Part shown: one piece after another, positions 7,753-42,504 of the stretch | Position numbering within the stretch: position 1 is the first letter of the stretch | Layout of the letters: the number at the start of each line of letters is the position of its first letter | From: Mantamonas sphyraenae STR306 | Taxonomy: Eukaryota > Protista > CRuMs | Direction: 5' to 3' | Length of the DNA: 64,000 bases | NCBI GenBank assembly: GCA_026936335.1 | Contig: JAPMXV010000044.1 | Coordinates: forward strand, 434,001-498,000 | Translations under genes and position numbers: made by a program | The notes under the pieces: model-generated | Database searches by the model: none | The model's input: only the letters and a program-made list of their open reading frames with translations | What the model was told of the DNA's origin: nothing

Positions 7753-10146
7753 TCACATCTCCTCACACTTTTCCTCCACCCGCTGTCGCTTGCCCAGCGC
7801 GCGCAACGCCTCAGCTGCAAACGCATCTTCCTCCTCATCAGGCGTCGACGGCCGACTAGAGTCGCTGCTGCTCGAATGCGTGCTTGCGCCACTCCACCCG
7901 CTCATCGTGCTCGCCTTGCGCTTGCTTCCGCTCTGCATCACATCCTGGATCGACGGCAACAGGTGCTTCATCTCACTGGACTGCTGCATCTGGCCCGCCT
8001 GCTGCTGCACCTGCTGGCCCTGCTGCTGGTACAGCTGCTCCAGCGCCATGCGCTGTGCCTGTGCCTGTGCCTGCTGTTCAGCCAGCTGCTGCTGTTGCTG
8101 CTGTTGATGTGCATCCTCCACTCGCATCTCCCAGCCACGCAGCTCTCCCAGCAGCTGGTGTTGCCATCCTCCAGGCTGCCCCTGCTGCTGTTGTTGAGAC
8201 TCCTGCTGCATCGCTTGCATCTGCTGTGCCAGACGCAGTTTCGCCATCTCCATCTGCATCTGCATTTGCATTTGCATGCGCAGTTGCAGTTGCAGCTTCA
8301 TCTGTAGCTGCTGCATGTGCGTCTCGATCCCGTTTCCTCCACCACTTCCGTATCCTCCCAGCAGCCCTTCCATCCCTCCCAGTCCACCCATCCCAGCCAC
8401 GTTGCTCATCCCTTCCACTTCCATCCTTCGTCCATGCTCTCCCATCGCAGATCCACCCTCGTCGCCATCCTCCACATCCTTTCCACCCCTCACCGACTTG
8501 CTGCCGCCGCTGCGACGTCGTCCACCCTTGCGCATAGACTTGCCCATCGTGTGGTGCGTCAGGGGCAGCACAAAGTTCCCAGCTTCGTCCAGCAGGTCGC
8601 CGTGGCACAGACATCCGCTCAGCATCTCCAACACTCGCGTAAACACCACGTAGTTCTGCTCGTTGCGATGTTCGTAGTGCCAGTTCTCGTCCTCCTCCAC
8701 AAAGTTGCTCTCTGCCACTGCGTCTCGTGCCTCGCGAAAGTCCAATCGTCCTTCGCTACGGTACAGCCGTCCTGCAATCACCTTGAACAGCTTTGCGTTC
8801 CAACGTCGGCGCACAGCACACGGCGGTCGTCCTTGGATCATCGACGAGATCTCCGCCCAGTGGTTTCCATGCTCACGCCACGCCTTGAACAACTGCACGT
8901 CCTCCTCTTCCGTCCACGGGCCGTGCTTGATGCTCGTGTCCAGTGCGTTCATCCAGTGCGTACGCACCTGAGACGTCGTGCGGTTCGGAAACAACGATGC
9001 AATCTGTCCAAAGTTGCCATTGAACTCTTCCACCGCCTCTCGCAGACGCTCGTTCTCCTCCTCCGACCACGGCGTACGCGAAAAGTAACGCCGTTGAGTC
9101 TTCACACCGTTCGCAGACCCCAGTGCAGACGTATATCGCTGCCGCACCTGTGCACACACAGTGTCCCAAACACCACGCCGTCCCACGACCCAGTTCCGAC
9201 ATCCGCCCATGCCCAGTGTACGCCCAATGTGTCCCGTTCGTCGCAAGCCACGTGTCAGCTACCCAAAAATGGCATGGAACCATCCACAACCTTCCCGTTT
9301 CGCACCCCTTTCCTTCCACGTCGACCACGTGCTACATGCATCACCCTCCTCCTTACCTGCTTCTCTGTCCGACCTGGCAGTCGCTTCGAGATCAGTGCCC
9401 ACTGGTCACCCAACTCATCGTATGCCTCGCGCAACACACGATCTTCCTCATCGCTCCACAATTCCTTCTTAATGTCCGGGTTCAGCGTGAACATGAACCG
9501 CTGCCGCACCTGCTCTCCCCGTCCTCCCTGTCAGTCCCTTGGTACCTGTGTACCTCTGCATCCTTTCTCCCACCCCCCCTCCGTCGTCCCATCACTTCCA
9601 AAAGCTCCAGTGCGAGGTTTCCGACACCAACCCCCTTTTTGTTCCCTCCTCTTTTTTCGTGCACTCACCTGCAGATATGTGCGTCCGGGCAGCATCTTGG
9701 CAATCTTGCTCCACGCGTTCCCGTGCTTTCCGTGCTCTTTCAGCAGGATGGCATCCTGCAGTGTGTGTGATGTGTCAGTACACGCGAAGCCGAAGCCTGC
9801 GTCGTCTGCAACTTTTCCTGCAGACACGCCACACTTCCTTTTTTTGGTCCGAAACCACACGCAAACCTCTCCTTGCCCCCACGCGATCTCCACCTGCTTC
9901 ACAATCCCCAAACACCCCCGCAAAACACGCCTCCACACAACATACTTCTTCTGCAGTCCATGCGCCTGACTTGATCTTCGGGTCCAGCGTATAGCGCCAG
10001 TGCTTTCGGATCGTCGACAAGCTTCGGTTCGGAAGAAGCTCCGCTGCTCGTTCAAAGTCAGGCTCGTCATCATGCGACAGGGTCTCTCGCAGGATGCGAT
10101 CCTCTTCGGCTGTCCATACTTGGATCTTTCGTTGCTTGCCGCTCAT
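7753..10146 (-). CDS. Five-repeat Myb transcription factor with Gln-rich C-terminus, copy 1 (~611 aa)
   Basis: Exons 10146-9946, 9755-9669, 9509-9357 and 9147-7753, all phase-0 GT-AG. Repeats begin WTAEED, WTAEED, WSDEED, WSEEEN and WTEEED, with IA..LPGRT-type recognition helices. Confidence 0.9.
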
Positions 10147-12342: not shown

Positions 12343-15048
12343 GGGTGTCAACTTGTGTGTCCATTGTGATTTGCATGGGTGCTTGTCGCCGCCCACCATC
12401 ATCTCTTCCTCTTTCTCCATCCTCGTCCTTCCTCCTGCACACCCTCTTTCACCCACAGACACAGCCACCTCCGATTTCAGCTTCGCCGCTCAGCCACTCA
12501 GCCGCTCAGCCGCTCAGCCACATGCTTCGTCTCCATCCTCACATCTCCTCACACTTTTCCTCCACCCGCTGTCGCTTGCCCAGCGCGCGCAACGCCTCAG
12601 CTGCAAACGCATCCTCCTCCTCATCAGGCGTCGACGGCCGACTAGAGTCGCTGCTGCTCGAATGCGTGCTTGCGCCACTCCACCCGCTCATCGTGCTCGC
12701 CTTGCGCTTGCTTCCGCTCTGCATCACATCCTGGATCGACGGCAACAGGTGCTTCATCTCACTGGATTGCTGCATCTGGCCCGCCTGCTGCTGCACCTGC
12801 TGGCCCTGCTGCTGGTACAGCTGCTCCAGCGCCATGCGCTGTGCCTGTGCCTGTGCCTGCTGTTCAGCCAGCTGCTGCTGTTGCTGCTGTTGATGTGCAT
12901 CCTCCACTCGCATCTCCCAGCCACGCAGCTCTCCCAGCAGCTGGTGTTGCCATCCTCCAGGCTGCCCCTGCTGCTGTTGTTGAGACTCCTGCTGCATCGC
13001 TTGCATCTGCTGTGCCAGACGCAGTTTCGCCATCTCCATCTGCATCTGCATTTGCATTTGCATGCGCAGTTGCAGTTGCAGCTTCATCTGTAGCTGCTGC
13101 ATGTGCGTCTCGATCCCGTTTCCTCCACCACTTCCGTATCCTCCCAGCAGCCCTTCCATCCCTCCCAGTCCACCCATCCCAGCCACGTTGCTCATCCCTT
13201 CCACTTCCATCCTTCGTCCATGCTCTCCCATCGCAGATCCACCCTCGTCGCCATCCTCCACATCCTTTCCACCCCTCACCGACTTGCTGCCGCCGCTGCG
13301 ACGTCGTCCACCCTTGCGCATAGACTTGCCCATCGTGTGGTGCGTCAGGGGCAGCACAAAGTTCCCAGCTTCGTCCAGCAGGTCGCCGTGGCACAGACAT
13401 CCGCTCAGCATCTCCAACACTCGCGTAAACACCACGTAGTTCTGCTCGTTGCGATGTTCGTAGTGCCAGTTCTCGTCCTCCTCCACAAAGTTGCTCTCTG
13501 CCACTGCGTCTCGTGCCTCGCGAAAGTCCAATCGTCCTTCGCTACGGTACAGCCGTCCTGCAATCACCTTGAACAGCTTTGCGTTCCAACGTCGGCGCAC
13601 AGCACACGGCGGTCGTCCTTGGATCATCGACGAGATCTCCGCCCAGTGGTTTCCATGCTCACGCCACGCCTTGAACAACTGCACGTCCTCCTCTTCCGTC
13701 CACGGGCCGTGCTTGATGCTCGTGTCCAGTGCGTTCATCCAGTGCGTACGCACCTGAGACGTCGTGCGGTTCGGAAACAACGATGCAATCTGTCCAAAGT
13801 TGCCATTGAACTCTTCCACCGCCTCTCGCAGACGCTCGTTCTCCTCCTCCGACCACGGCGTACGCGAAAAGTAACGCCGTTGAGTCTTCACACCGTTCGC
13901 AGACCCCAGTGCAGACGTATATCGCTGCCGCACCTGTGCACACACAGTGTCCCAAACACCACGCCGTCCCACGACCCAGTTCCGACATCCGCCCATGCCC
14001 AGTGTACGCCCAATGTGTCCCGTTCGTCGCAAGCCACGTGTCAGCTACCCAAAAATGGCATGGAACCATCCACAACCTTCCCGTTTCGCACCCCTTTCCT
14101 TCCACGTCGACCACGTGCTACATGCATCACCCTCCTCCTTACCTGCTTCTCTGTCCGACCTGGCAGTCGCTTCGAGATCAGTGCCCACTGGTCACCCAAC
14201 TCATCGTATGCCTCGCGCAACACACGATCTTCCTCATCGCTCCACAATTCCTTCTTAATGTCCGGGTTCAGCGTGAACATGAACCGCTGCCGCACCTGCT
14301 CTCCCCGTCCTCCCTGTCAGTCCCTTGGTACCTGTGTACCTCTGCATCCTTTCTCCCACCCCCCCTCCGTCGTCCCATCACTTCCAAAAGCTCCAGTGCG
14401 AGGTTTCCGACACCAACCCCCTTTTTGTTCCCTCCTCTTTTTTCGTGCACTCACCTGCAGATATGTGCGTCCGGGCAGCATCTTGGCAATCTTGCTCCAC
14501 GCGTTCCCGTGCTTTCCGTGCTCTTTCAGCAGGATGGCATCCTGCAGTGTGTGTGATGTGTCAGTACACGCGAAGCCGAAGCCTGCGTCGTCTGCAACTT
14601 TTCCTGCAGACACGCCACACTTCCTTTTTTTGGTCCGAAACCACACGCAAACCTCTCCTTGCCCCCACGCGATCTCCACCTGCTTCACAATCCCCAAACA
14701 CCCCCGCAAAACACGCCTCCACACAACATACTTCTTCTGCAGTCCATGCGCCTGACTTGATCTTCGGGTCCAGCGTATAGCGCCAGTGCTTTCGGATCGT
14801 CGACAAGCTTCGGTTCGGAAGAAGCTCCGCTGCTCGTTCAAAGTCAGGCTCGTCATCATGCGACAGGGTCTCTCGCAGGATGCGATCCTCTTCGGCTGTC
14901 CATACTTGGATCTTTCGTTGCTTGCCGCTCATGACTTGGTGTTTGCTTTCGACTATATGTCGGGTAATTGCGCAGTTATAAACGCTCTGGGAGCGATGGC
15001 GGGAGCGAGCGGGCGACGCTTGTTCTGAGCGAGATCGATGCCTACGGG
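12343..15048. repeat. Copy 2 of the ~2.7 kb direct duplication
   Basis: Matches 7549-10262. Confidence 0.97.
12539..14932 (-). CDS. Five-repeat Myb transcription factor, copy 2 (same predicted protein as copy 1)
   Basis: Exons 14932-14732, 14541-14455, 14295-14143 and 13933-12539. The two coding substitutions I found are synonymous. Confidence 0.9.
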
Positions 15049-33222: not shown

Positions 33223-34791
33223 TCACTGCTTGGCCCAGCGAAGCATCATGCCAGGCATGGTGAACCCTGTGATGTTGTCGTCTGCGTCGGTCTGGAAAAA
33301 CACCCAGGAGTCAAACTGGGCGAGCAGCTCGGTGGCCATGCACTCCTGAACCGTCATGTCGATGGACATGGAAAACATCAGGTCTGCGTGCCATTCAAAC
33401 ACCACAGGCTGGTTCTGCACGACCAGAGTGCCTGTGGGGGACAGAGCAAGCTGCAGCGGGACTCCCAGGTCAATCTCCTTATAGGTGCCCACAAGTGACT
33501 TGAGCAGAGTGGCGTTGGCTCGGGGCTGCGTGTACTTCTGCTGTGCCACCACATAGGCCGACACATCGTCGAGCAGGAGATTGTAGACGGTGTCGAGCAG
33601 GGCAAACTCGTTGACGTTGGACCGAGAGGAGACGAGGTTCACCGACAGCGCCAGTTCGGCCACGTAGGACATAGCGGCGGCGTATCCAGGAACATTGCCA
33701 CCCTTGGAGCGGACGAGGTAGTTGCTGATTCGGCGCAACTCCCAGGGCATGCCAAAGCCGGTCTCGCCGTCAGCGTTGAGAAAGGCAATCTGGTGCATGG
33801 TGCGGATGGTCTCGGGAGCAAGGACCTGGGAAGTGCGCACTCCAGCCACTCCATGGATCAGCAGCTGCGTAAAGGCGTCCAGGTCGTTGATGTTGCTGAA
33901 CATCTGGCCGGCCGGCCTGTTCCAGCCAAAGTCGTACAGACCCACAGGCACGTTGGCTGCAGCGTAGCCCTGGGCCATGTTGGCTTGCACGTCTGCAGAA
34001 AAGTTGTTGCCTGTGCTGTGCAGGCCGAGCTGGTCCAGCAGGTGCGAGCGCATCGCCGACGTAAAGTCTGTCTTGGCCATGGCTGCGGCGGCATTGCCGA
34101 TGATCGAGAAGCCCAGGTTGCTGTAAGACGGATACTCTTGGGGCAGACGTACCAGGTAGGAACTGGCGATGTTCTGCAGGATCTGCGTCTCGGGCAAGTG
34201 GCAAAACGCCGTAAAGTTGCATGGCGTCTCACGTGGCAAGCCAGCAAGCTGTGTGGCTGCGTTGCGCCATGTCACCAGGTTCTCCTCGTCGTTGAACACA
34301 TTCTGTGGCTCACGGAACTGCTGCCAAGAGGCAGAAATGGGATAGTCCAGGCCGCCGATGCTACCCTGCTCGTGCAGACGCATCATCAACGCCGTGGTGA
34401 ACACCTTGCTCACTGAGCCGATGCGAAACTGCGTCGTGTCGCTTGGAGGCGTGCTGTTGCCCGCAGAGATGGTGCCAAAGCCAAACGTGCTGCGCGTGGA
34501 TGCGCCGAACGAAAGCGACATCCGCAGCGCGCCATAGTCGCCTCCGTCCTTGAATGCCTGTCCCACAGCCTGTTGGACCTTGTCCACAAGAGCGTCCCAG
34601 TTGGGAGGTGCGTCCATGTGGATGGCTGCGTGCGGGAGGCCCTGCGGTGGGCAGGTGGCCGCAGCTTGCTTGCTCGCTGCCACAAACGACTCCCAGCGTG
34701 CTCGTTTAAAGTGAACATCTCCACTCGGCAAGGCTTGGGCCACACACAACGTCACGCTGAGGCCAATGAGGAAAAGAAAGGTCGGACGCAT
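33223..34791 (-). CDS. Secreted beta-lactamase/penicillin-binding-fold serine hydrolase (LACTBL1-like)
   Basis: Signal peptide; FRIGSVSK (SxxK), YSNLGF (YxN), PAGQMFSN..DL and KGG motifs; intronless 522-aa ORF. Confidence 0.9.
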   Translation of the reverse strand: MRPTFLFLIGLSVTLCVAQALPSGDVHFKRARWESFVAASKQAAATCPPQGLPHAAIHMDAPPNWDALVDKVQQAVGQAFKDGGDYGALRMSLSFGASTRSTFGFGTISAGNSTPPSDTTQFRIGSVSKVFTTALMMRLHEQGSIGGLDYPISASWQQFREPQNVFNDEENLVTWRNAATQLAGLPRETPCNFTAFCHLPETQILQNIASSYLVRLPQEYPSYSNLGFSIIGNAAAAMAKTDFTSAMRSHLLDQLGLHSTGNNFSADVQANMAQGYAAANVPVGLYDFGWNRPAGQMFSNINDLDAFTQLLIHGVAGVRTSQVLAPETIRTMHQIAFLNADGETGFGMPWELRRISNYLVRSKGGNVPGYAAAMSYVAELALSVNLVSSRSNVNEFALLDTVYNLLLDDVSAYVVAQQKYTQPRANATLLKSLVGTYKEIDLGVPLQLALSPTGTLVVQNQPVVFEWHADLMFSMSIDMTVQECMATELLAQFDSWVFFQTDADDNITGFTMPGMMLRWAKQ

Positions 34792-34812
34792 GTTTTGTTT
34801 TCGTTGGGTTCA

Positions 34813-37060
34813 TCATCGCCATTGCTCTCTCAGCCACTGCTTGACATCGTGTTCCGTGGGGTTGTTCTGGATTTGGAAACGGATCATCTCCTGTAGAATG
34901 ATACCGATTCGCGGTCCACTGGGGATGCCCAGAAGGTCGCTGATCTGGTTGCCCCGGACAAGCGGCGTCATCTCGATCGACTTGAGCACCTTGCCCTGCA
35001 TAAAGATGGCCTGTCGAAAGGCCTCGATGCGCACGTACGAAGACAACAGCATTTCCTTGTTCTCAGGCAGGCTGGCCGAGTGAAGCTGAATCCGCTCGAG
35101 GTCACGCTGGCTCAACGAGGTGTCCGTCACCGCACCAAAGTCCATCACAGACACTTCTGTGTTTTTGTCTTCGTCCACCATGTGCTGTTCCTCCGGCAGC
35201 ACGCTCAGCATCAGGCTCAGCTGCCATCGCTCGTGGCCCATTGCTCGAAGCCACAGCGCCGTCTCCAGCGGCAACGCGTTCAGATAGTCCTGAAACAGAC
35301 CGCGCAGACGCAGAAAGGGTCGCTTCATGGCAATGTTGCTGGGCGTTAGATCCTCATCGCTGTAGCGGCTGCTGCTTCGCTCCTCTTTTTCGCGGGCCAC
35401 CGCGTACTTGGATGCCTCCTGGAGCAAGAAATAGGCGTTTCGTGCGCCGTGGATGATCTTAAACACGGCCGAAGCGTCAGCAGCGCTGAATTTGAGGCTC
35501 TTGCTGATGAGGTTGTGGACGAGGTGGAATGCGAGCGAGCGGCCATTGAGTGACTCCACCATGTCACGCGGAGTGTAATCTGTGGTTGTGTAGGCATCGG
35601 CCACAGAGCAGGCGTGGAAAAGGATGGAAGCTAGGAATGCCAGGTGGCCATCTTCGCTGACGTGCCGCGAAGGCCGTGCTTGGCGGGAGCGCATATCCTG
35701 CACGACCGAGAGGTTGCGAAAGGCGCTGGACCATCCGTAGTTTTGGTTGAAGGGGAAAATGATGTTGAGGAGGGAACCGTTGTGGAGCAGCTCCACCAGG
35801 CGCACGTGGTTGCGCGAGTTGGTAAGCATCTTTTGCAACTCGACCGTCACGCGCTCACGCGACACCTTGCGTCGAAGCGCCTCCTGGACGTCGTCATCCA
35901 GGCATGCCAGGGTTGTCTCTGGATGGATGTTGAACCCGTACGTGGAGGCAAAGCGGATGACACGCAACACACGCAGCGGATCGTCCAGGAACGTCTCTTT
36001 GGGGGGCAGCGGGGTACGGATCAGGTTCTGTTCCAAGTCCGACATGCCCAAGTGTGTGTAATCCTCGACCATTTGTGTGTTGAGGTTATAGAACAGCGAA
36101 TTGATCGTCATGTCTCGGCGATGCGCATCCTGGCCGGGGGTGCCAAACCTCATATCCGGGATCCTCGAGTTGTGTGCGTATGTTTCGGAGCGCAAGTTGA
36201 CCAGATCGATCTCCATGCCAAACAGCGTCGTGCGCGTCGTCTGCAGGTGCTTCGACTGCGACGGATTCACTTTGATGTTGGCAAACCGCAGCTCTTCAAT
36301 GCCCTTTTCCACGCAGTAGTCGCTCAGGTACTTCGAGAATGCTTCTCCAGTCATGTTATCCAGGGCTACGTCGACGTCGTCGCCTTCCTTGCCCATGAGC
36401 TGTACACGGCCTTGTGTAAGTGTGCCGATTGCAGGACTCGGAAGTTTCTCGCCTTCCCCTTTGTCGCACGCACGCAACCCTGACACGTGCGTGCAGCTGT
36501 TCCCCTTGACCACTTACCTTGTTGCGCACCCAGCCGCCGGCAATGCGGAAATTGACGTCCAGCTTGTAGCGCAGCCGCACGTCTTCGAGGAGCCGGAACA
36601 GATTCTTCTCGCGCTTGTTCAGCTTGATCAGCGTGCCTGGAAACACCAGAGGCGGGCGCTGGTCCAAAGTGACTACGTTCTCTTCGCCCAGCGTGGCCAA
36701 GGCGCCAGAGGAGCTGTTTGCACTGCGCACGGGTTGGGACAAAGGAGAGGCCCGGTGCAAACACACCCTGCTGCGGTGCAGCACCCCGGAAGCGGCAGTC
36801 CCAGCTAACCTGTGTGTGTGTAGGCCACGCGCAAGGCCCTTGCTCCCGTTGGATGTGCTGGAGCACACGTGCAAGCTGCCACGCAGACGCAACGCGGCGT
36901 CTTTCCTGAGGTCAGGTTCGTTCCTCCCCGGGCTGCACTGCCGCAGCAGCTGGCCTGCCCGCTGGACCATGGCGTCCCTGCGTGGCACCAGTGCAGAGGT
37001 TGCCACGGGTCGACGCAACACATGAATGGCGGACGCCGCTGCTCGTCGGCGGCCAAACAT
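34813..37060 (-). CDS. CCA1: CCA-adding tRNA nucleotidyltransferase (class II) with presequence-like N-terminus
   Basis: Exons 37060-36518 and 36399-34813. Motifs AGGWVR, DVDVALD, NPSQSKHLQT, DLVNLRSETY..SRIP, RRDMTINSLFYN, DDPLRVLR and SRERV. Confidence 0.92.
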
Positions 37061-37882: not shown

Positions 37883-38788
37883 TCACCGCCCCACGTACCT
37901 GTAGCGAGCCATGCTGGGCCCCACATAGTCGTACTCATCCCTGGAGATGGCATACAGGGGCGCTGTAGAGATGGAGGCCATGATGCTGCCGCCGATCCAA
38001 GTGCTGAACTTGCGTTCGGGAGGAGCGATGACACGTGGCCTAGCTGACGGCACGATGGCTTCCAGTTCCTCCTGGATGCGATCGGACAACCCCCTGTACA
38101 TGCTGGAGCCGCCGGCGAGGATGATGTTGTTGAGAAGATCGAGTCGCACCGCCTCGTCCACGGCCAGAACAGAGTCCAGAATCATATCCGTGACACCCAT
38201 CTCCTCCAAGCCTGCCAGAGAGGGTTCAAACAGGATTTCCACAGCGCGGTAGGCCTCGTTGCCCACAGAAATGCTCTGGCCATCGGGGAGCTCGTACATC
38301 TGCTCCGTGTCCTTGCCTTGATCGTCTTTGTCTTTGTTCGCAGATCCTACGTAGCAGGTCTTGCGCTTGACATCATCAACAATGTCCCTCTCTGCAGTTG
38401 TGGTGAAGCTGTACCCTCGTTCCGTCAAGATCTTCATCAGGTGATCGGTCACCGTGTCGCCACCGACCATGGAGCTCACCACTCCGTGTTCCACCACGCT
38501 CGTTTCGTAGATGGGCACCACAAAGGTCGTGGACGCTCCCACCATGACCACCAACCCAGTCGTGCGTCCGCTTGCCAGCAGAGCCAACACAGCCTGATCC
38601 GCTAGCATCACGCCTTGCACCCCGAACGTTTCAAACAGCATCTGCACATACTTCTCCCGTTGGGATGCCGGCAACATGGGTGCCATCGTCATGACCACGG
38701 TCGTCTCTTCCGGAACCACACGCAACTCATTGAAGAACGTGTGGTGCATCACCTTTTCAGCATCATCCCAGTTGACAGTAATGCTCAT
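37883..38788 (-). CDS. Actin-like protein lacking the first ~73 residues (actin C-terminal fragment, 301 aa)
   Basis: NWDDAEKVMHHTFFNELRV, FETF, QAVLALLASGRTTG, LMKILTERGYSFTTTAE, YELPDGQ, LAGGSSMY and APPERKFSTWIGGSI. The ORF is intact to the C-terminus, and an in-frame stop lies ~29 codons upstream of the ATG. Confidence 0.92.
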   Translation of the reverse strand: MSITVNWDDAEKVMHHTFFNELRVVPEETTVVMTMAPMLPASQREKYVQMLFETFGVQGVMLADQAVLALLASGRTTGLVVMVGASTTFVVPIYETSVVEHGVVSSMVGGDTVTDHLMKILTERGYSFTTTAERDIVDDVKRKTCYVGSANKDKDDQGKDTEQMYELPDGQSISVGNEAYRAVEILFEPSLAGLEEMGVTDMILDSVLAVDEAVRLDLLNNIILAGGSSMYRGLSDRIQEELEAIVPSARPRVIAPPERKFSTWIGGSIMASISTAPLYAISRDEYDYVGPSMARYRYVGR

Positions 38789-39003
38789 GGTAAACGGTAT
38801 GCGGGGCAGTTGATTTGGAGGCGGGTGCGCACCCTCTGGTCCTGCCTCTTGACGGATGAGGAAGGAGGAAGGTCAGGCAGAATTCGCCAACCTGGACATC
38901 CTTCCTCGCCTTCCTCGTTGGCAAACAAAACCGGCAGGTGGCACGGTGCCCGGTCACAACCAATATATTCTTCTGCACTTCACCGAACCACACCCATCCC
39001 ACG

Positions 39004-39756
39004 ATGAAGTTTGCAAGCGAACGCCTGTTCACGGGCGAAGAAGAGACCGAGCAGATCTTTGCCGACGAAGTGGCAGACGGCGTGCTCAACGCAGCACGCG
39101 AGCAACTGCAGGCCTGGCTGGAAGAAGCAGGAGCCTACAACAAAACATTCATCCCGCAGCTCATGAGCCTGTTGCAGACCAGGGAGCGCAAGGGTGATCA
39201 AGCAAGCAACGCCGGCAACCAGGCGATGTTCCAACAGCGCATGTCTGAACGCCTGCGCCAAGAGTCTTCTCGCAGGACGCAGCGCAGCAAGCGCTTGGCT
39301 GCACTGAAAAAGCAACTGGACGCCCAGGTGGGCACTTGGTCTGCCTCGAGGCGTGCCTTTCGCACCGACTCCTCCTTCCCCCAACAATCGACAAACGATC
39401 TGGGCGAGCTGCCCCTCCCTGTGGTCATTGACGTCGGTGGTGCCATGGTCAAGGCTGGTTTCGGCGGTGACGATGCACCCCGCGCTGTGTTTCCGTCGCT
39501 TGTGGGACGCCCCCGCCACCAGGGCGTCATGGTGGGCATGGGCCAGAAGGAAGCCTATGTGGGTGACGAATCACAAAGCAAACGAGGCATTCTCACCCTC
39601 AAACGCCCATTCGAGGCGTACCGCGCTCCCGAGCGTCGCTCTACCACGTCGCTCCACCTTCTCACCCGCGATCTCGACAGCGCCGACTCGGATGATGATC
39701 AAGAAAACTCATCCTTGGTGGTTGTAAACGCATGCAGTGGTAACGAAGGCGTCAGC

Positions 39757-39790
<34 letters not shown>

Positions 39791-41679
39791 GCAACAGCGA
39801 CGATGGTGCTCAGGGACAAGAACAGCAGGCCGAAGACGTGGTGGCTGAGCATCCCGTGTCCAACGCCAACGCCGTGATGGTGCAACTGGCAGAGTACACG
39901 AGCACGACCCAGAGCAGCAGCAGCAGCAGCAGCAGCAAGCACGCAGCAGACAACGTCAGTCACGCCACAGGAGATCCCATCCACTGCACGGGATGCACGG
40001 CAGTCCTCAATGCTCTCTCTGTGCTGCAGCCCATGTCGGAGGAGGACATCGAGGACGAAGATGCACCCAAGGACTACCTGTGGGAATGCGAGTTCTGCGG
40101 CGTCGAGAACGAACTGTGGATGGTGGCCAAGGAGGAGATTCCCACGGGTGCACGCGTGCAATACTTGCTGGAGCCTGCAAAGGCGCAGTCAGACGACTCA
40201 AGGTCGCGCCAAGGCATCGTAGTCTTTGCTGTCGACACATCGGGCTCCATGTCCTCCACCATCCGTGTGCAGACCAACAAGCTGACCAAAAACATGCGCG
40301 ACGCCGTCGAAGCGAACAATGACCGCATGCGGGAGGCCATGGGCATGACCAAGCAGGAGTGGGCCGCCGCAAGGCCTGCTTCCAACGGCAGCGCCTACAT
40401 GAGCAGGCTGGACTGTGTCAAGGCGGCCGTGCGGGCACAAATCCTCGCGCTGTGCGATTCTTCGCCCTCCACTCCGGTGATGCTGCTCACCTTCAACGGC
40501 AAGCTCACCATCTACGGCGATTGCTGCGGCGTCTCGCAGGTCGTCACGGGAGACGTGCTGTACGACAACGAAGAGCTTACTGCACGTGCAGAACTGTTTG
40601 GGTCGTGTCGTTCGGTGTCCGAGGCACGTGACAACCTGCTGGCCACCCTGGACTCGCTGCAGGAGAGCGGCGCAACCGCGCTGGGTCCTGCCATGACGGT
40701 GGCCAATCACTTTGCCCGTGCCACTCCGGGATCCAACATCATTGTGTGCACGGATGGTGTGGCCAATCTGGGCGTGGGTACCATGGGGAACAGTGCGCGT
40801 GTGCCCAAGGGTGTGCAGATGGCCGGTCTCACGGGCAAGTCGTTCTACTCCGATGTGGCTTCCCGCGCCGCCAGCAGGGGCACTCGCATCGACGTCATCA
40901 CCATCCAAGGCGACGACTGCAAGATGGAGATCCTCGGTCTGATGGCAGACACGACCGGCGGCAACGTCGACATTGTCGATCCCCTCAGCCTGGCTTCCAG
41001 CGTAACCCGGATGCTTCAGGACTCCATCATCGGCACAGACGCCAATTGCACGCTTATTGGCAACCACACGTGGCATGTGGACAGCCCTGCCATCGATCAC
41101 ACACGCTCCATGGACAATGGGGAGCGGTCCGCCGTCGCCGGTGTCAAGCACGCCGCACACGTTCACGTAGGCAACGTCAGCAAGTCCTCTCAGGTCACCT
41201 TTGACCTTCATACCACCCGCTACGTCAGCCAGGGCGCACATCCGTTTCAACTCCAGGTCGAGTACACCGATGGCGACGGTGCGCGGTTCCTTTCCGTGCA
41301 CACGCTCGAGCAGGCCGTCACCAGCGATCGCACCAGCAGCGAAAGCCATCTGGATGGATCCCTCACAGCCATCCACGCCATCCGCGTCGCCGCCAGTGCT
41401 GCTCACCAGGGAGACTACGATCAGGCTCGCCACACCCTCATCAGCATGCAACGCCTGCTCCAGCGATCCATGCACTCGGAGGCCGACCAACTCAACTACT
41501 ACTACTTTGTCAAGCAGGCCGAGAAGCTGGACACCTTTATGCGTCTCGCACAGACCATCGAACAAACGCTCCAAGTCAGCGGCAACACCGACGCACGCTC
41601 CGACCTCCGCAACGACGCAAACTCAAAGGCCATGTTCCAGTTTAAGCACCTCACAGAGTCAGGTTTTGTGTGTGTGTAA
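39004..41679 (+). CDS. Actin-N-fragment / Sec23-type Zn finger / vWA protein (cpRAS-family body)
   Basis: Intronless ORF. Actin N-terminal segment at 39418-39615; CTGC..CEFC Zn finger; [30 protein letters not shown] and [14 protein letters not shown]. Confidence 0.88.
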
Positions 41680-41688
41680 ATGCAGGCC

Positions 41689-42504
41689 TCACTTCCCTTG
41701 CCCAACTTCGTCCAGCAACTCCTTGGCCACCTGCGCGATCACACGAAAACGCAGCCCGCCCAGCAACACGCCGCCATACCACCGAGTCACCACCACCAGC
41801 ACGTTTTCACACTCCATCGACACCAGAAGTCGCAGCAGAGTGTCTCCAGCACGGTTCTCCCCGTCGTCCTCCCGGTTCTCGTGCAGCGAGCCGTCTCCTG
41901 TTCGAATGCGGAACGCATACATGTTGTGTGTCGCGTTTGCAATCTTGCTGTTCTCGTAAAGCTTGTTGACCACCGCCTGAACCTCCTCCACGCTCTCCAC
42001 GTGCGCATAGTGCGCCTGAAACTTGCTCTTTTTCACCGTCGACACGTTGCCCGTCACAATCATCGGCGTAGGCACACTCGAGTCCACCTCCTCCTCCACA
42101 TTCGAACCGCGGCTCCCTTGGTCAATGTTTCCCCACTCTTCACTCTGGCCTGCTTCTGGCGTGTCTTCGCTGTCGCCCTGTGGGAGAGAATCCGCATGGT
42201 CGTTCAGCCAATCGACCCAGCTGAACAGCACCACCTGCCCAGGCTCCCACAATTCCGACAAGCTGCGTTCTACTGCTCGTTCCTGCGAGCCTGTACATCC
42301 ACTGTGTCGCACAACGAGCCGCGGTGCAGCTTCGGCCGGGTAGTTTTCCGGCAGCTCAAAGTGCAACTCCCAACCGCTCCTCAACACAATGGCGTGCCAC
42401 CCCGGCAGGTCACTTTCCTGCATCTCCTCTTCGTACATTCCTTGCATCACCATCAGCTCATCCTGCGCCTCGTCACTAAGCGTCGCCTCCCCTGTCGACG
42501 ACAT
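41689..42504 (-). CDS. IMPACT: IMPACT/Yih1 protein (RWD + ancient UPF0029 domain); an upstream start is possible
   Basis: RWD segment LPENYP..AP; KKSKFQAH, KIANATHNMYAFRI, EDDGE.AG and VVVTRWYGGVLLG. Confidence 0.93.
   Translation of the reverse strand: MSSTGEATLSDEAQDELMVMQGMYEEEMQESDLPGWHAIVLRSGWELHFELPENYPAEAAPRLVVRHSGCTGSQERAVERSLSELWEPGQVVLFSWVDWLNDHADSLPQGDSEDTPEAGQSEEWGNIDQGSRGSNVEEEVDSSVPTPMIVTGNVSTVKKSKFQAHYAHVESVEEVQAVVNKLYENSKIANATHNMYAFRIRTGDGSLHENREDDGENRAGDTLLRLLVSMECENVLVVVTRWYGGVLLGGLRFRVIAQVAKELLDEVGQGK

What the first reader, a model, noticed from the sequence alone, without database searches (positions are those of the whole stretch)
37883..41679. Split actin: complementary halves of one actin fold in two head-to-head genes
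Seen: the minus gene starts MSITVNWDD (about actin residue 74) and runs intact to the actin C-terminus. The plus gene, whose ATG is only 215 bp away, contains [65 protein letters not shown] (about residues 8-72), and actin similarity stops right where the partner begins (actin ..LKYPIE|HGIITNWDD). Both ORFs are uninterrupted. Established: residues 8-32 form core strands of subdomain 1 and 33-69 form subdomain 2, so neither piece should fold as actin alone. Inference: the genes share a bidirectional promoter and their products assemble in trans into an actin fold tethered to a Zn-finger/vWA scaffold. That would be a two-chain actin-related module, perhaps a filament cap, nucleator or decoy.
Basis: partly seen in the sequence, partly recalled or inferred. 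Interest (0 to 1): 0.95.

Follow-up and report, generated by a model that had tools for sequence, protein, structure and literature searches.

The report
Actin fold split across two genes
In a marine protist, an actin-containing protein that is one chain in many other microbes is cut inside its actin part into two neighbouring genes, and both halves stay conserved as if they reassemble, which would be the first natural two-chain actin I know of.

Summary
Confirmed. The genome matches Mantamonas sphyraenae. Gene B (+, 891 aa) holds actin residues 8-72; gene A (-, 301 aa) starts with Met at position 73 and holds the rest. ATGs are 215 bp apart. About 50 proteins from amoebozoans, dinoflagellates, a choanoflagellate and metagenomes carry B's N-terminal domain, a whole actin in normal order and B's Sec23-like Zn-finger/vWA core in one chain. 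The pair is therefore a fission of that family (no paper found); no intact copy remains here. AT-rich eukaryotes encode A-type actins with the same start, upstream in-frame stops and dN/dS 0.09-0.33. The pair keeps 109 of 119 family-conserved sites. The pointed-end face, shared between the chains, is 36/37 identical to host actin; the barbed face is 14/39 and the phosphate loops are degenerate. Best reading: A and B reassemble into an ATPase-poor pseudo-actin that caps or anchors filament barbed ends on the scaffold. Other first readers noted this same DNA; no note on other DNA was found.

The parts
37883..38788 (-). Gene A, 301 aa: actin positions 73-375 (second half of subdomain 1, subdomains 3 and 4), own ATG at the His73 position and own stop
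   Evidence: AlphaFold pLDDT 84.7 with an actin alignment, TM 0.9 to actin
38390..38425 (-). A residues 122-133 = actin 194-205, subdomain-4 pointed-end face, identical to host actin
38273..38293 (-). A residues 166-172 = actin 241-247, subdomain-4 pointed-end face, 6 of 7 identical to host actin
38789..39003 (.). 215-bp spacer between the two divergent ATGs; presumed promoter region, untested; imperfect 22-nt inverted repeat is not beyond chance
   Evidence: z -1.1
39004..41679 (+). Gene B, 891 aa: the ancestral fusion protein minus actin 73-375
39004..39357 (+). B 1-118: family-specific N-terminal domain (short strands, then a long helix); confidently modelled and probably packed on the C-terminal core
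   Evidence: family HMM E 8.5e-12; alignment; pLDDT about 90, whole-chain pTM 0.77
39418..39615 (+). B 139-204: actin 7-72 (three subdomain-1 strands, phosphate loop 1, subdomain 2 with D-loop)
   Evidence: residues 167-204 have pLDDT below 50 alone
39511..39549 (+). D-loop segment, actin 38-50, identical to host actin
39616..39837 (+). B 205-278: acidic, Ser-rich linker where relatives have actin 73-375 plus a linker; no actin relic detected
39838..41676 (+). B 279-891: Sec23/24-like core of the cpRAS-VWA type: four-Cys Zn finger (about 325-371), vWA/trunk domain with DxSxS and TDG motifs, beta-sandwich, helical domain
   Evidence: (Foldseek to Sec23/24, E 3e-22); PMC2430557

Best explanation
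The two genes are the fission products of one ancestral gene encoding N-domain + actin + Sec23-like Zn-finger/vWA core (shown by homology). The cut lies in the surface sensor loop at His73; the middle piece gained its own start codon and now lies inverted upstream (shown); an inverted duplication with reciprocal loss is the likely route (inferred). Both products are made, and A binds the actin 8-72 piece of B to rebuild one actin fold (inferred from conservation). The rebuilt domain has a perfect pointed-end face, a decayed barbed face and degenerate phosphate loops (shown in sequence). It should therefore dock on a filament barbed end, stop growth there and tether that end to the Sec23-like scaffold, with little or no ATPase cycle (inferred). 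Confidence is about 0.72 for reassembly and about 0.4 for the capping or anchoring role.
For: Intact one-chain relatives, with B aligning on both sides of the missing actin part. B's vWA lies among actin-fused proteins (weak support) and A among fused-family actins, not conventional ones. No intact copy in the genome. 109 of 119 family-conserved actin sites are kept, within the 0-26 range of changes of intact members. Pointed face 36/37 against barbed face 14/39, Fisher p 4e-9; other divergent host actin-like proteins keep only 1-7 of the 18 subdomain-2 sites. A-type genes elsewhere start at the same residue with in-frame stops upstream and show dN/dS 0.09-0.33, usually lowest in the subdomain-1 half. 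Protease-nicked actin fragments stay associated while the cation is bound (PMC7311988).
Against: No reads, no co-folding and no binding data. No B-type protein was found in any other organism, so partners of the AT-rich A-type actins are unknown. AlphaFold folds A confidently alone, but it had an actin alignment, so this says little about stability. Face residue sets come from my knowledge of F-actin, not from coordinates, and were chosen after I had seen the conservation table, so the p value is descriptive. The subdomain-4 face is also fairly well kept in a generic divergent actin (16/19). Nicked actin was folded before the cut; folding from two separate chains is harder.
Confidence: 0.72

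Rival explanations
1. Real fission, but the halves work apart: B shows a free D-loop and strand piece as a mimic or binding motif for actin or actin-binding proteins, and A is stabilised by another partner or works as a truncated fold.
For: A-type genes occur in other organisms where no B-type partner was found. B's subdomain 2 is more conserved than in the average intact relative.
Against: B also keeps the three core strands and A keeps the strand and helices that pack on them. The break is exact, and the two genes remain adjacent.
Confidence: 0.15
2. The pieces are rejoined at RNA level (trans-splicing) or A has an upstream exon, so an ordinary single chain is made.
For: A branch-point, pyrimidine-tract and AG-like signal lies upstream of A's ATG, and the frame is open for 28 codons upstream.
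Against: It needs two joins across opposite strands. A has its own ATG at a position shared with other organisms and its own stop. No GT donor lies at the Glu72 codon boundary. No spare actin N-terminal exon turned up in the genome. Relatives have in-frame stops upstream of the same ATG.
Confidence: 0.06
3. A recent rearrangement broke the gene and one or both pieces are decaying.
For: A is a long branch with a worn barbed face and nucleotide loops.
Against: Both frames are open, GC3 is 0.73-0.74 like neighbours, and the changes avoid family-conserved sites. A's divergence is too large for an unselected frame to stay open.
Confidence: 0.04
4. Assembly artefact.
For: Reads could not be examined.
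Against: PacBio-based assembly with mostly telomere-bounded contigs (PMC10492846). A mis-join would not create a start codon at a position shared with other organisms, a clean stop and an in-frame join inside B.
Confidence: 0.03

Closest known systems
Unnamed N-domain-(WW)-actin-ZnF-vWA fusion family (e.g. Balamuthia KAL6071768.1, Mastigamoeba m51a1_g10717, Mastigella, Stephanoeca, Polykrikos, Scrippsiella; Arcella without the N-domain)
   Same: Same N-domain, actin and Sec23-like core; same bias toward a conserved pointed face (41 of 50 members) and degenerate phosphate loops.
   Different: One chain with all of actin in normal order; here actin 73-375 is a separate gene. No paper describing the family was found.
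cpRAS-VWA proteins (Elias and Novotny 2008, PMC2430557)
   Same: Four-Cys Zn finger plus vWA/Sec23-trunk C-terminal half carrying a rearranged nucleotide-binding domain at the N-terminus; scattered across protists.
   Different: No Ras domain; the actin is split between genes, not circularly permuted.
Sec23/Sec24 COPII subunits
   Same: Zn finger, trunk, beta-sandwich and helical domains in a similar fold.
   Different: About 15% identity, no C-terminal gelsolin-like domain detected, and an actin module attached.
Actin-related proteins and actin fusions (Arp2/3, dynactin Arp11, filactin, POTE-actin; own knowledge)
   Same: An actin fold that keeps only one filament-contact face and acts at a filament end.
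   Different: All are single chains. Arp2/3 and Arp11 use the barbed face; this one keeps the pointed face.
Protease-nicked actin (grimelysin/ECP32 cut at Gly42-Val43; PMC7311988)
   Same: Two actin fragments hold together in the native fold.
   Different: Made by cutting a folded protein at another site; not genetically encoded.

Membership tests
Conventional actin | Single chain of about 375 aa with the whole fold | tested here: not met
   Two ORFs, 8-72 and 73-375
Conventional actin | Intact phosphate loops, His73, Asp154, His161 | tested here: not met
   S14G, G15A, H73M, D154M, D157A, G158S, H161F, E214R; D11, K18, Q137, K213, K336 kept
Conventional actin | Both filament-contact faces conserved | tested here: not met
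   Pointed 36/37, barbed 14/39, lateral 6/16
Actin fold superfamily (PF00022) | Profile and fold match | tested here: met
   Both pieces pass the Pfam cut-off; A model TM 0.9 to actin
N-domain-actin-ZnF-vWA fusion family | Family N-terminal domain | tested here: met
   HMM E 8.5e-12 on B 1-72
N-domain-actin-ZnF-vWA fusion family | vWA core from the actin-linked group | tested here: met
   B falls with all actin-linked rows; support 60 for the group, 90 for the inner fork
N-domain-actin-ZnF-vWA fusion family | Complete actin domain in the same chain | tested here: not met
   Actin 73-375 absent from B
cpRAS-VWA | Circularly permuted Ras domain | tested here: not met
   No Ras match in Pfam or PDB
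cpRAS-VWA | Four-Cys Zn finger plus vWA C-terminal half | tested here: met
Circularly permuted actin | Order 73-375 then 8-72 in one chain, here or in relatives | tested here: not met
   All actin-vWA relatives have normal order
Barbed-end capping factor | Binds filament barbed ends and blocks elongation | not testable with these tools
   Inferred from face conservation only
Split (two-chain) protein | Both chains expressed and physically associated | not testable with these tools

The most novel reading that the evidence does not exclude
A naturally two-chain actin fold, cut at His73, that is old or has arisen more than once at the same site in distant eukaryotes, and that forms a barbed-end cap on a Sec23-like scaffold only when both chains are present.
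Probability: 0.3. Interest if true: 0.93.

Novelty: new variant of a known kind. Interest (0 to 1): 0.8.

Why it matters
Actin is regarded as an obligate single chain that folds through the CCT chaperonin (own knowledge). A natural two-gene version shows where the fold tolerates a break, makes chaperonin-free or two-step folding testable, and suggests a split-actin reagent that caps only when both parts meet. The work also exposes a widespread actin-Sec23-like fusion family for which I found no paper, a possible link between filament ends and a coat-like scaffold in early eukaryotes.

Tried and rejected
Co-folding was not possible (single natural chains only) and no coordinates were available. 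Circular permutation was my first idea and is rejected. No viral source for the AT-rich A-type genes. No relic of a duplicated gene near A or B; the few actin-like codons upstream of A's ATG are too weak to count. The spacer hairpin is not significant. One origin for all A-type genes is neither shown nor rejected. ESM Atlas added nothing. The Toxoplasma ring match is plain Sec23/24.

Full report
Source. The genome has 25,061,354 bases in 78 contigs, matching the 25.06 Mb, 78-contig, 59% GC assembly of Mantamonas sphyraenae (CRuMs) in PMC10492846. It has five conventional actin loci and several Arp-like loci besides this pair.

Observation. Gene A (37883-38788, minus, 301 aa) and gene B (39004-41679, plus, 891 aa) are open frames whose ATGs are 215 nt apart. 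A matches actin 75-371 and B residues 139-204 match actin 7-72. In alignment B ends at Glu72 and A's Met occupies His73. Codon composition is like that of neighbouring genes.

Parent family. Searches with B and with its best relative returned about 50 proteins of 1050-1470 aa with the order N-domain, optional WW, complete actin, linker, Zn finger, vWA, beta-sandwich, helical domain. Named members come from Amoebozoa (Balamuthia, Mastigamoeba, Mastigella; Arcella lacks the N-domain), dinoflagellates and the choanoflagellate Stephanoeca. B aligns to the best relative over 1-204 and 253-888, so it is that protein minus actin 73-375. B's vWA groups with the actin-linked proteins (weak support) and A groups among their actin domains rather than with conventional actins. 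The genome holds no intact copy; its two other vWA relatives showed no actin match. The C-terminal half is the type described in cpRAS-VWA proteins (PMC2430557) and folds like Sec23/24. No relative has a permuted actin. Paper searches found no description of the family or of a split actin, but the library lacks most subscription journals.

The same cut elsewhere. Four clusters of 303-304 aa proteins (about 20 sequences) begin at the same residue with Met-Ser and continue into the 79-91 helix. They lie on short intronless AT-rich contigs (about 34% GC) that start 43-144 nt before the ATG, nearly all with an in-frame stop upstream and no AG at the start. They look like mRNAs; that the JGI samples are forest-soil metatranscriptomes is from memory. 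Pairwise dN/dS is 0.09-0.33 and usually lowest in the subdomain-1 half, which would be orphaned without a partner. They share rare residues with A, including Met73, Ser74, Ala82, Met154 and Phe161, though some divergent fused proteins share as many by count. A tree with the start columns joins them to A (SH-aLRT 90); without those columns A moves to a long branch and the AT-rich group sits by the Arcella fusion, and one clade is not rejected (p-AU 0.33). So there was either one old fission or two at the same site. No B-type partner was found for them, and their contigs are too short to test the head-to-head layout.

Are both halves under selection, and for what? Of 119 actin positions conserved in at least 90% of 50 intact relatives, the pair keeps 109, mostly with mild changes; intact members change 0-26. 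A keeps the strand and helices that pack against strands 8-32, and B keeps those strands. AlphaFold models B's N-domain and core with high confidence (pTM 0.77), gives strands 8-32 moderate confidence and leaves subdomain 2 disordered. A is modelled as the matching part of actin, which reflects its alignment more than its stability. Using residue sets from my knowledge of F-actin, the pointed-end face is 18/18 on B and 18/19 on A identical to host actin, against 14/39 for the barbed face, 6/16 lateral and 12/31 nucleotide site. The same bias holds in 41 of 50 intact relatives. Other divergent actin-like proteins of this genome keep 1-7 of the 18 subdomain-2 sites, though one keeps 16/19 of the subdomain-4 sites. 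His73 is present in only 48% of intact relatives and Gln137 in 10%, so the sensor loop was already relaxed, which makes it a plausible place to break.

Mechanism. Shown: fission at 72/73, retention of both pieces, one intact face divided between the chains. Inferred: A and B associate; the rebuilt subunit uses its pointed-end face to bind a filament barbed end; its worn barbed face stops further addition; the filament end is thereby held on the Sec23-like core. A precedent for a two-piece native fold is protease-nicked actin (PMC7311988). Rivals are separate functions (0.15), RNA-level rejoining (0.06), decay (0.04) and misassembly (0.03).

Limits. A shared promoter is untested: short spacers are common in this window and the spacer's hairpin is within chance.

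Verdict. The feature is real and well supported as a conserved fission through the actin fold; reassembly is likely but unproven. Novelty: new variant of a known kind, near the edge of that class. Interest 0.8.

Noticed in passing
P0001-P0004, P0012-P0020, P0346-P0409, P0419: The intact actin-Sec23-like vWA fusion family itself seems undescribed and is spread over Amoebozoa, dinoflagellates and a choanoflagellate; a Cymbomonas member has WH2 motifs instead of the vWA core.
   Followed up: partly
L063:105-1220 (P0200): Full-length actin whose first 95 residues look like another divergent actin and whose remainder is A-type; either an assembly chimera or a re-fused or unsplit form.
   Followed up: partly
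L049-L053, L095-L100, about 70-120 nt upstream of the ATG: A conserved element in the leaders of the AT-rich A-type contigs; may be the end of an upstream same-strand ORF or part of an opposite-strand gene.
   Followed up: partly
L049, L058, L094, L099, downstream of the A-type gene: A convergent gene about 190 nt downstream, identified in L058 as a GDE1-like glycerophosphodiester phosphodiesterase; could help place these organisms.
   Followed up: partly
L058:1-60: A piece of actin 116-134 followed by a GT donor-like site at the 5' end of an A-type contig; probably chimeric or unspliced.
   Followed up: no
window 7753-9210 and 12539-13996: Two copies, 4786 nt apart, of a 485-aa minus-strand ORF; a recent tandem duplication or an assembly duplicate.
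   Followed up: partly
G000:C43:243061-244812 and G000:C40:98438-100513: Two further Zn-finger/vWA relatives of the cpRAS-VWA type without a detected actin part.
   Followed up: partly
G000:C37:173694-174803: A divergent single-exon actin, 58% identical to the host's main actin, with a changed D-loop.
   Followed up: no
window 41679-41689 and 34791-34813: Very short spacers: 9 nt between the stops of B and its convergent neighbour, 21 nt between two co-oriented genes.
   Followed up: no
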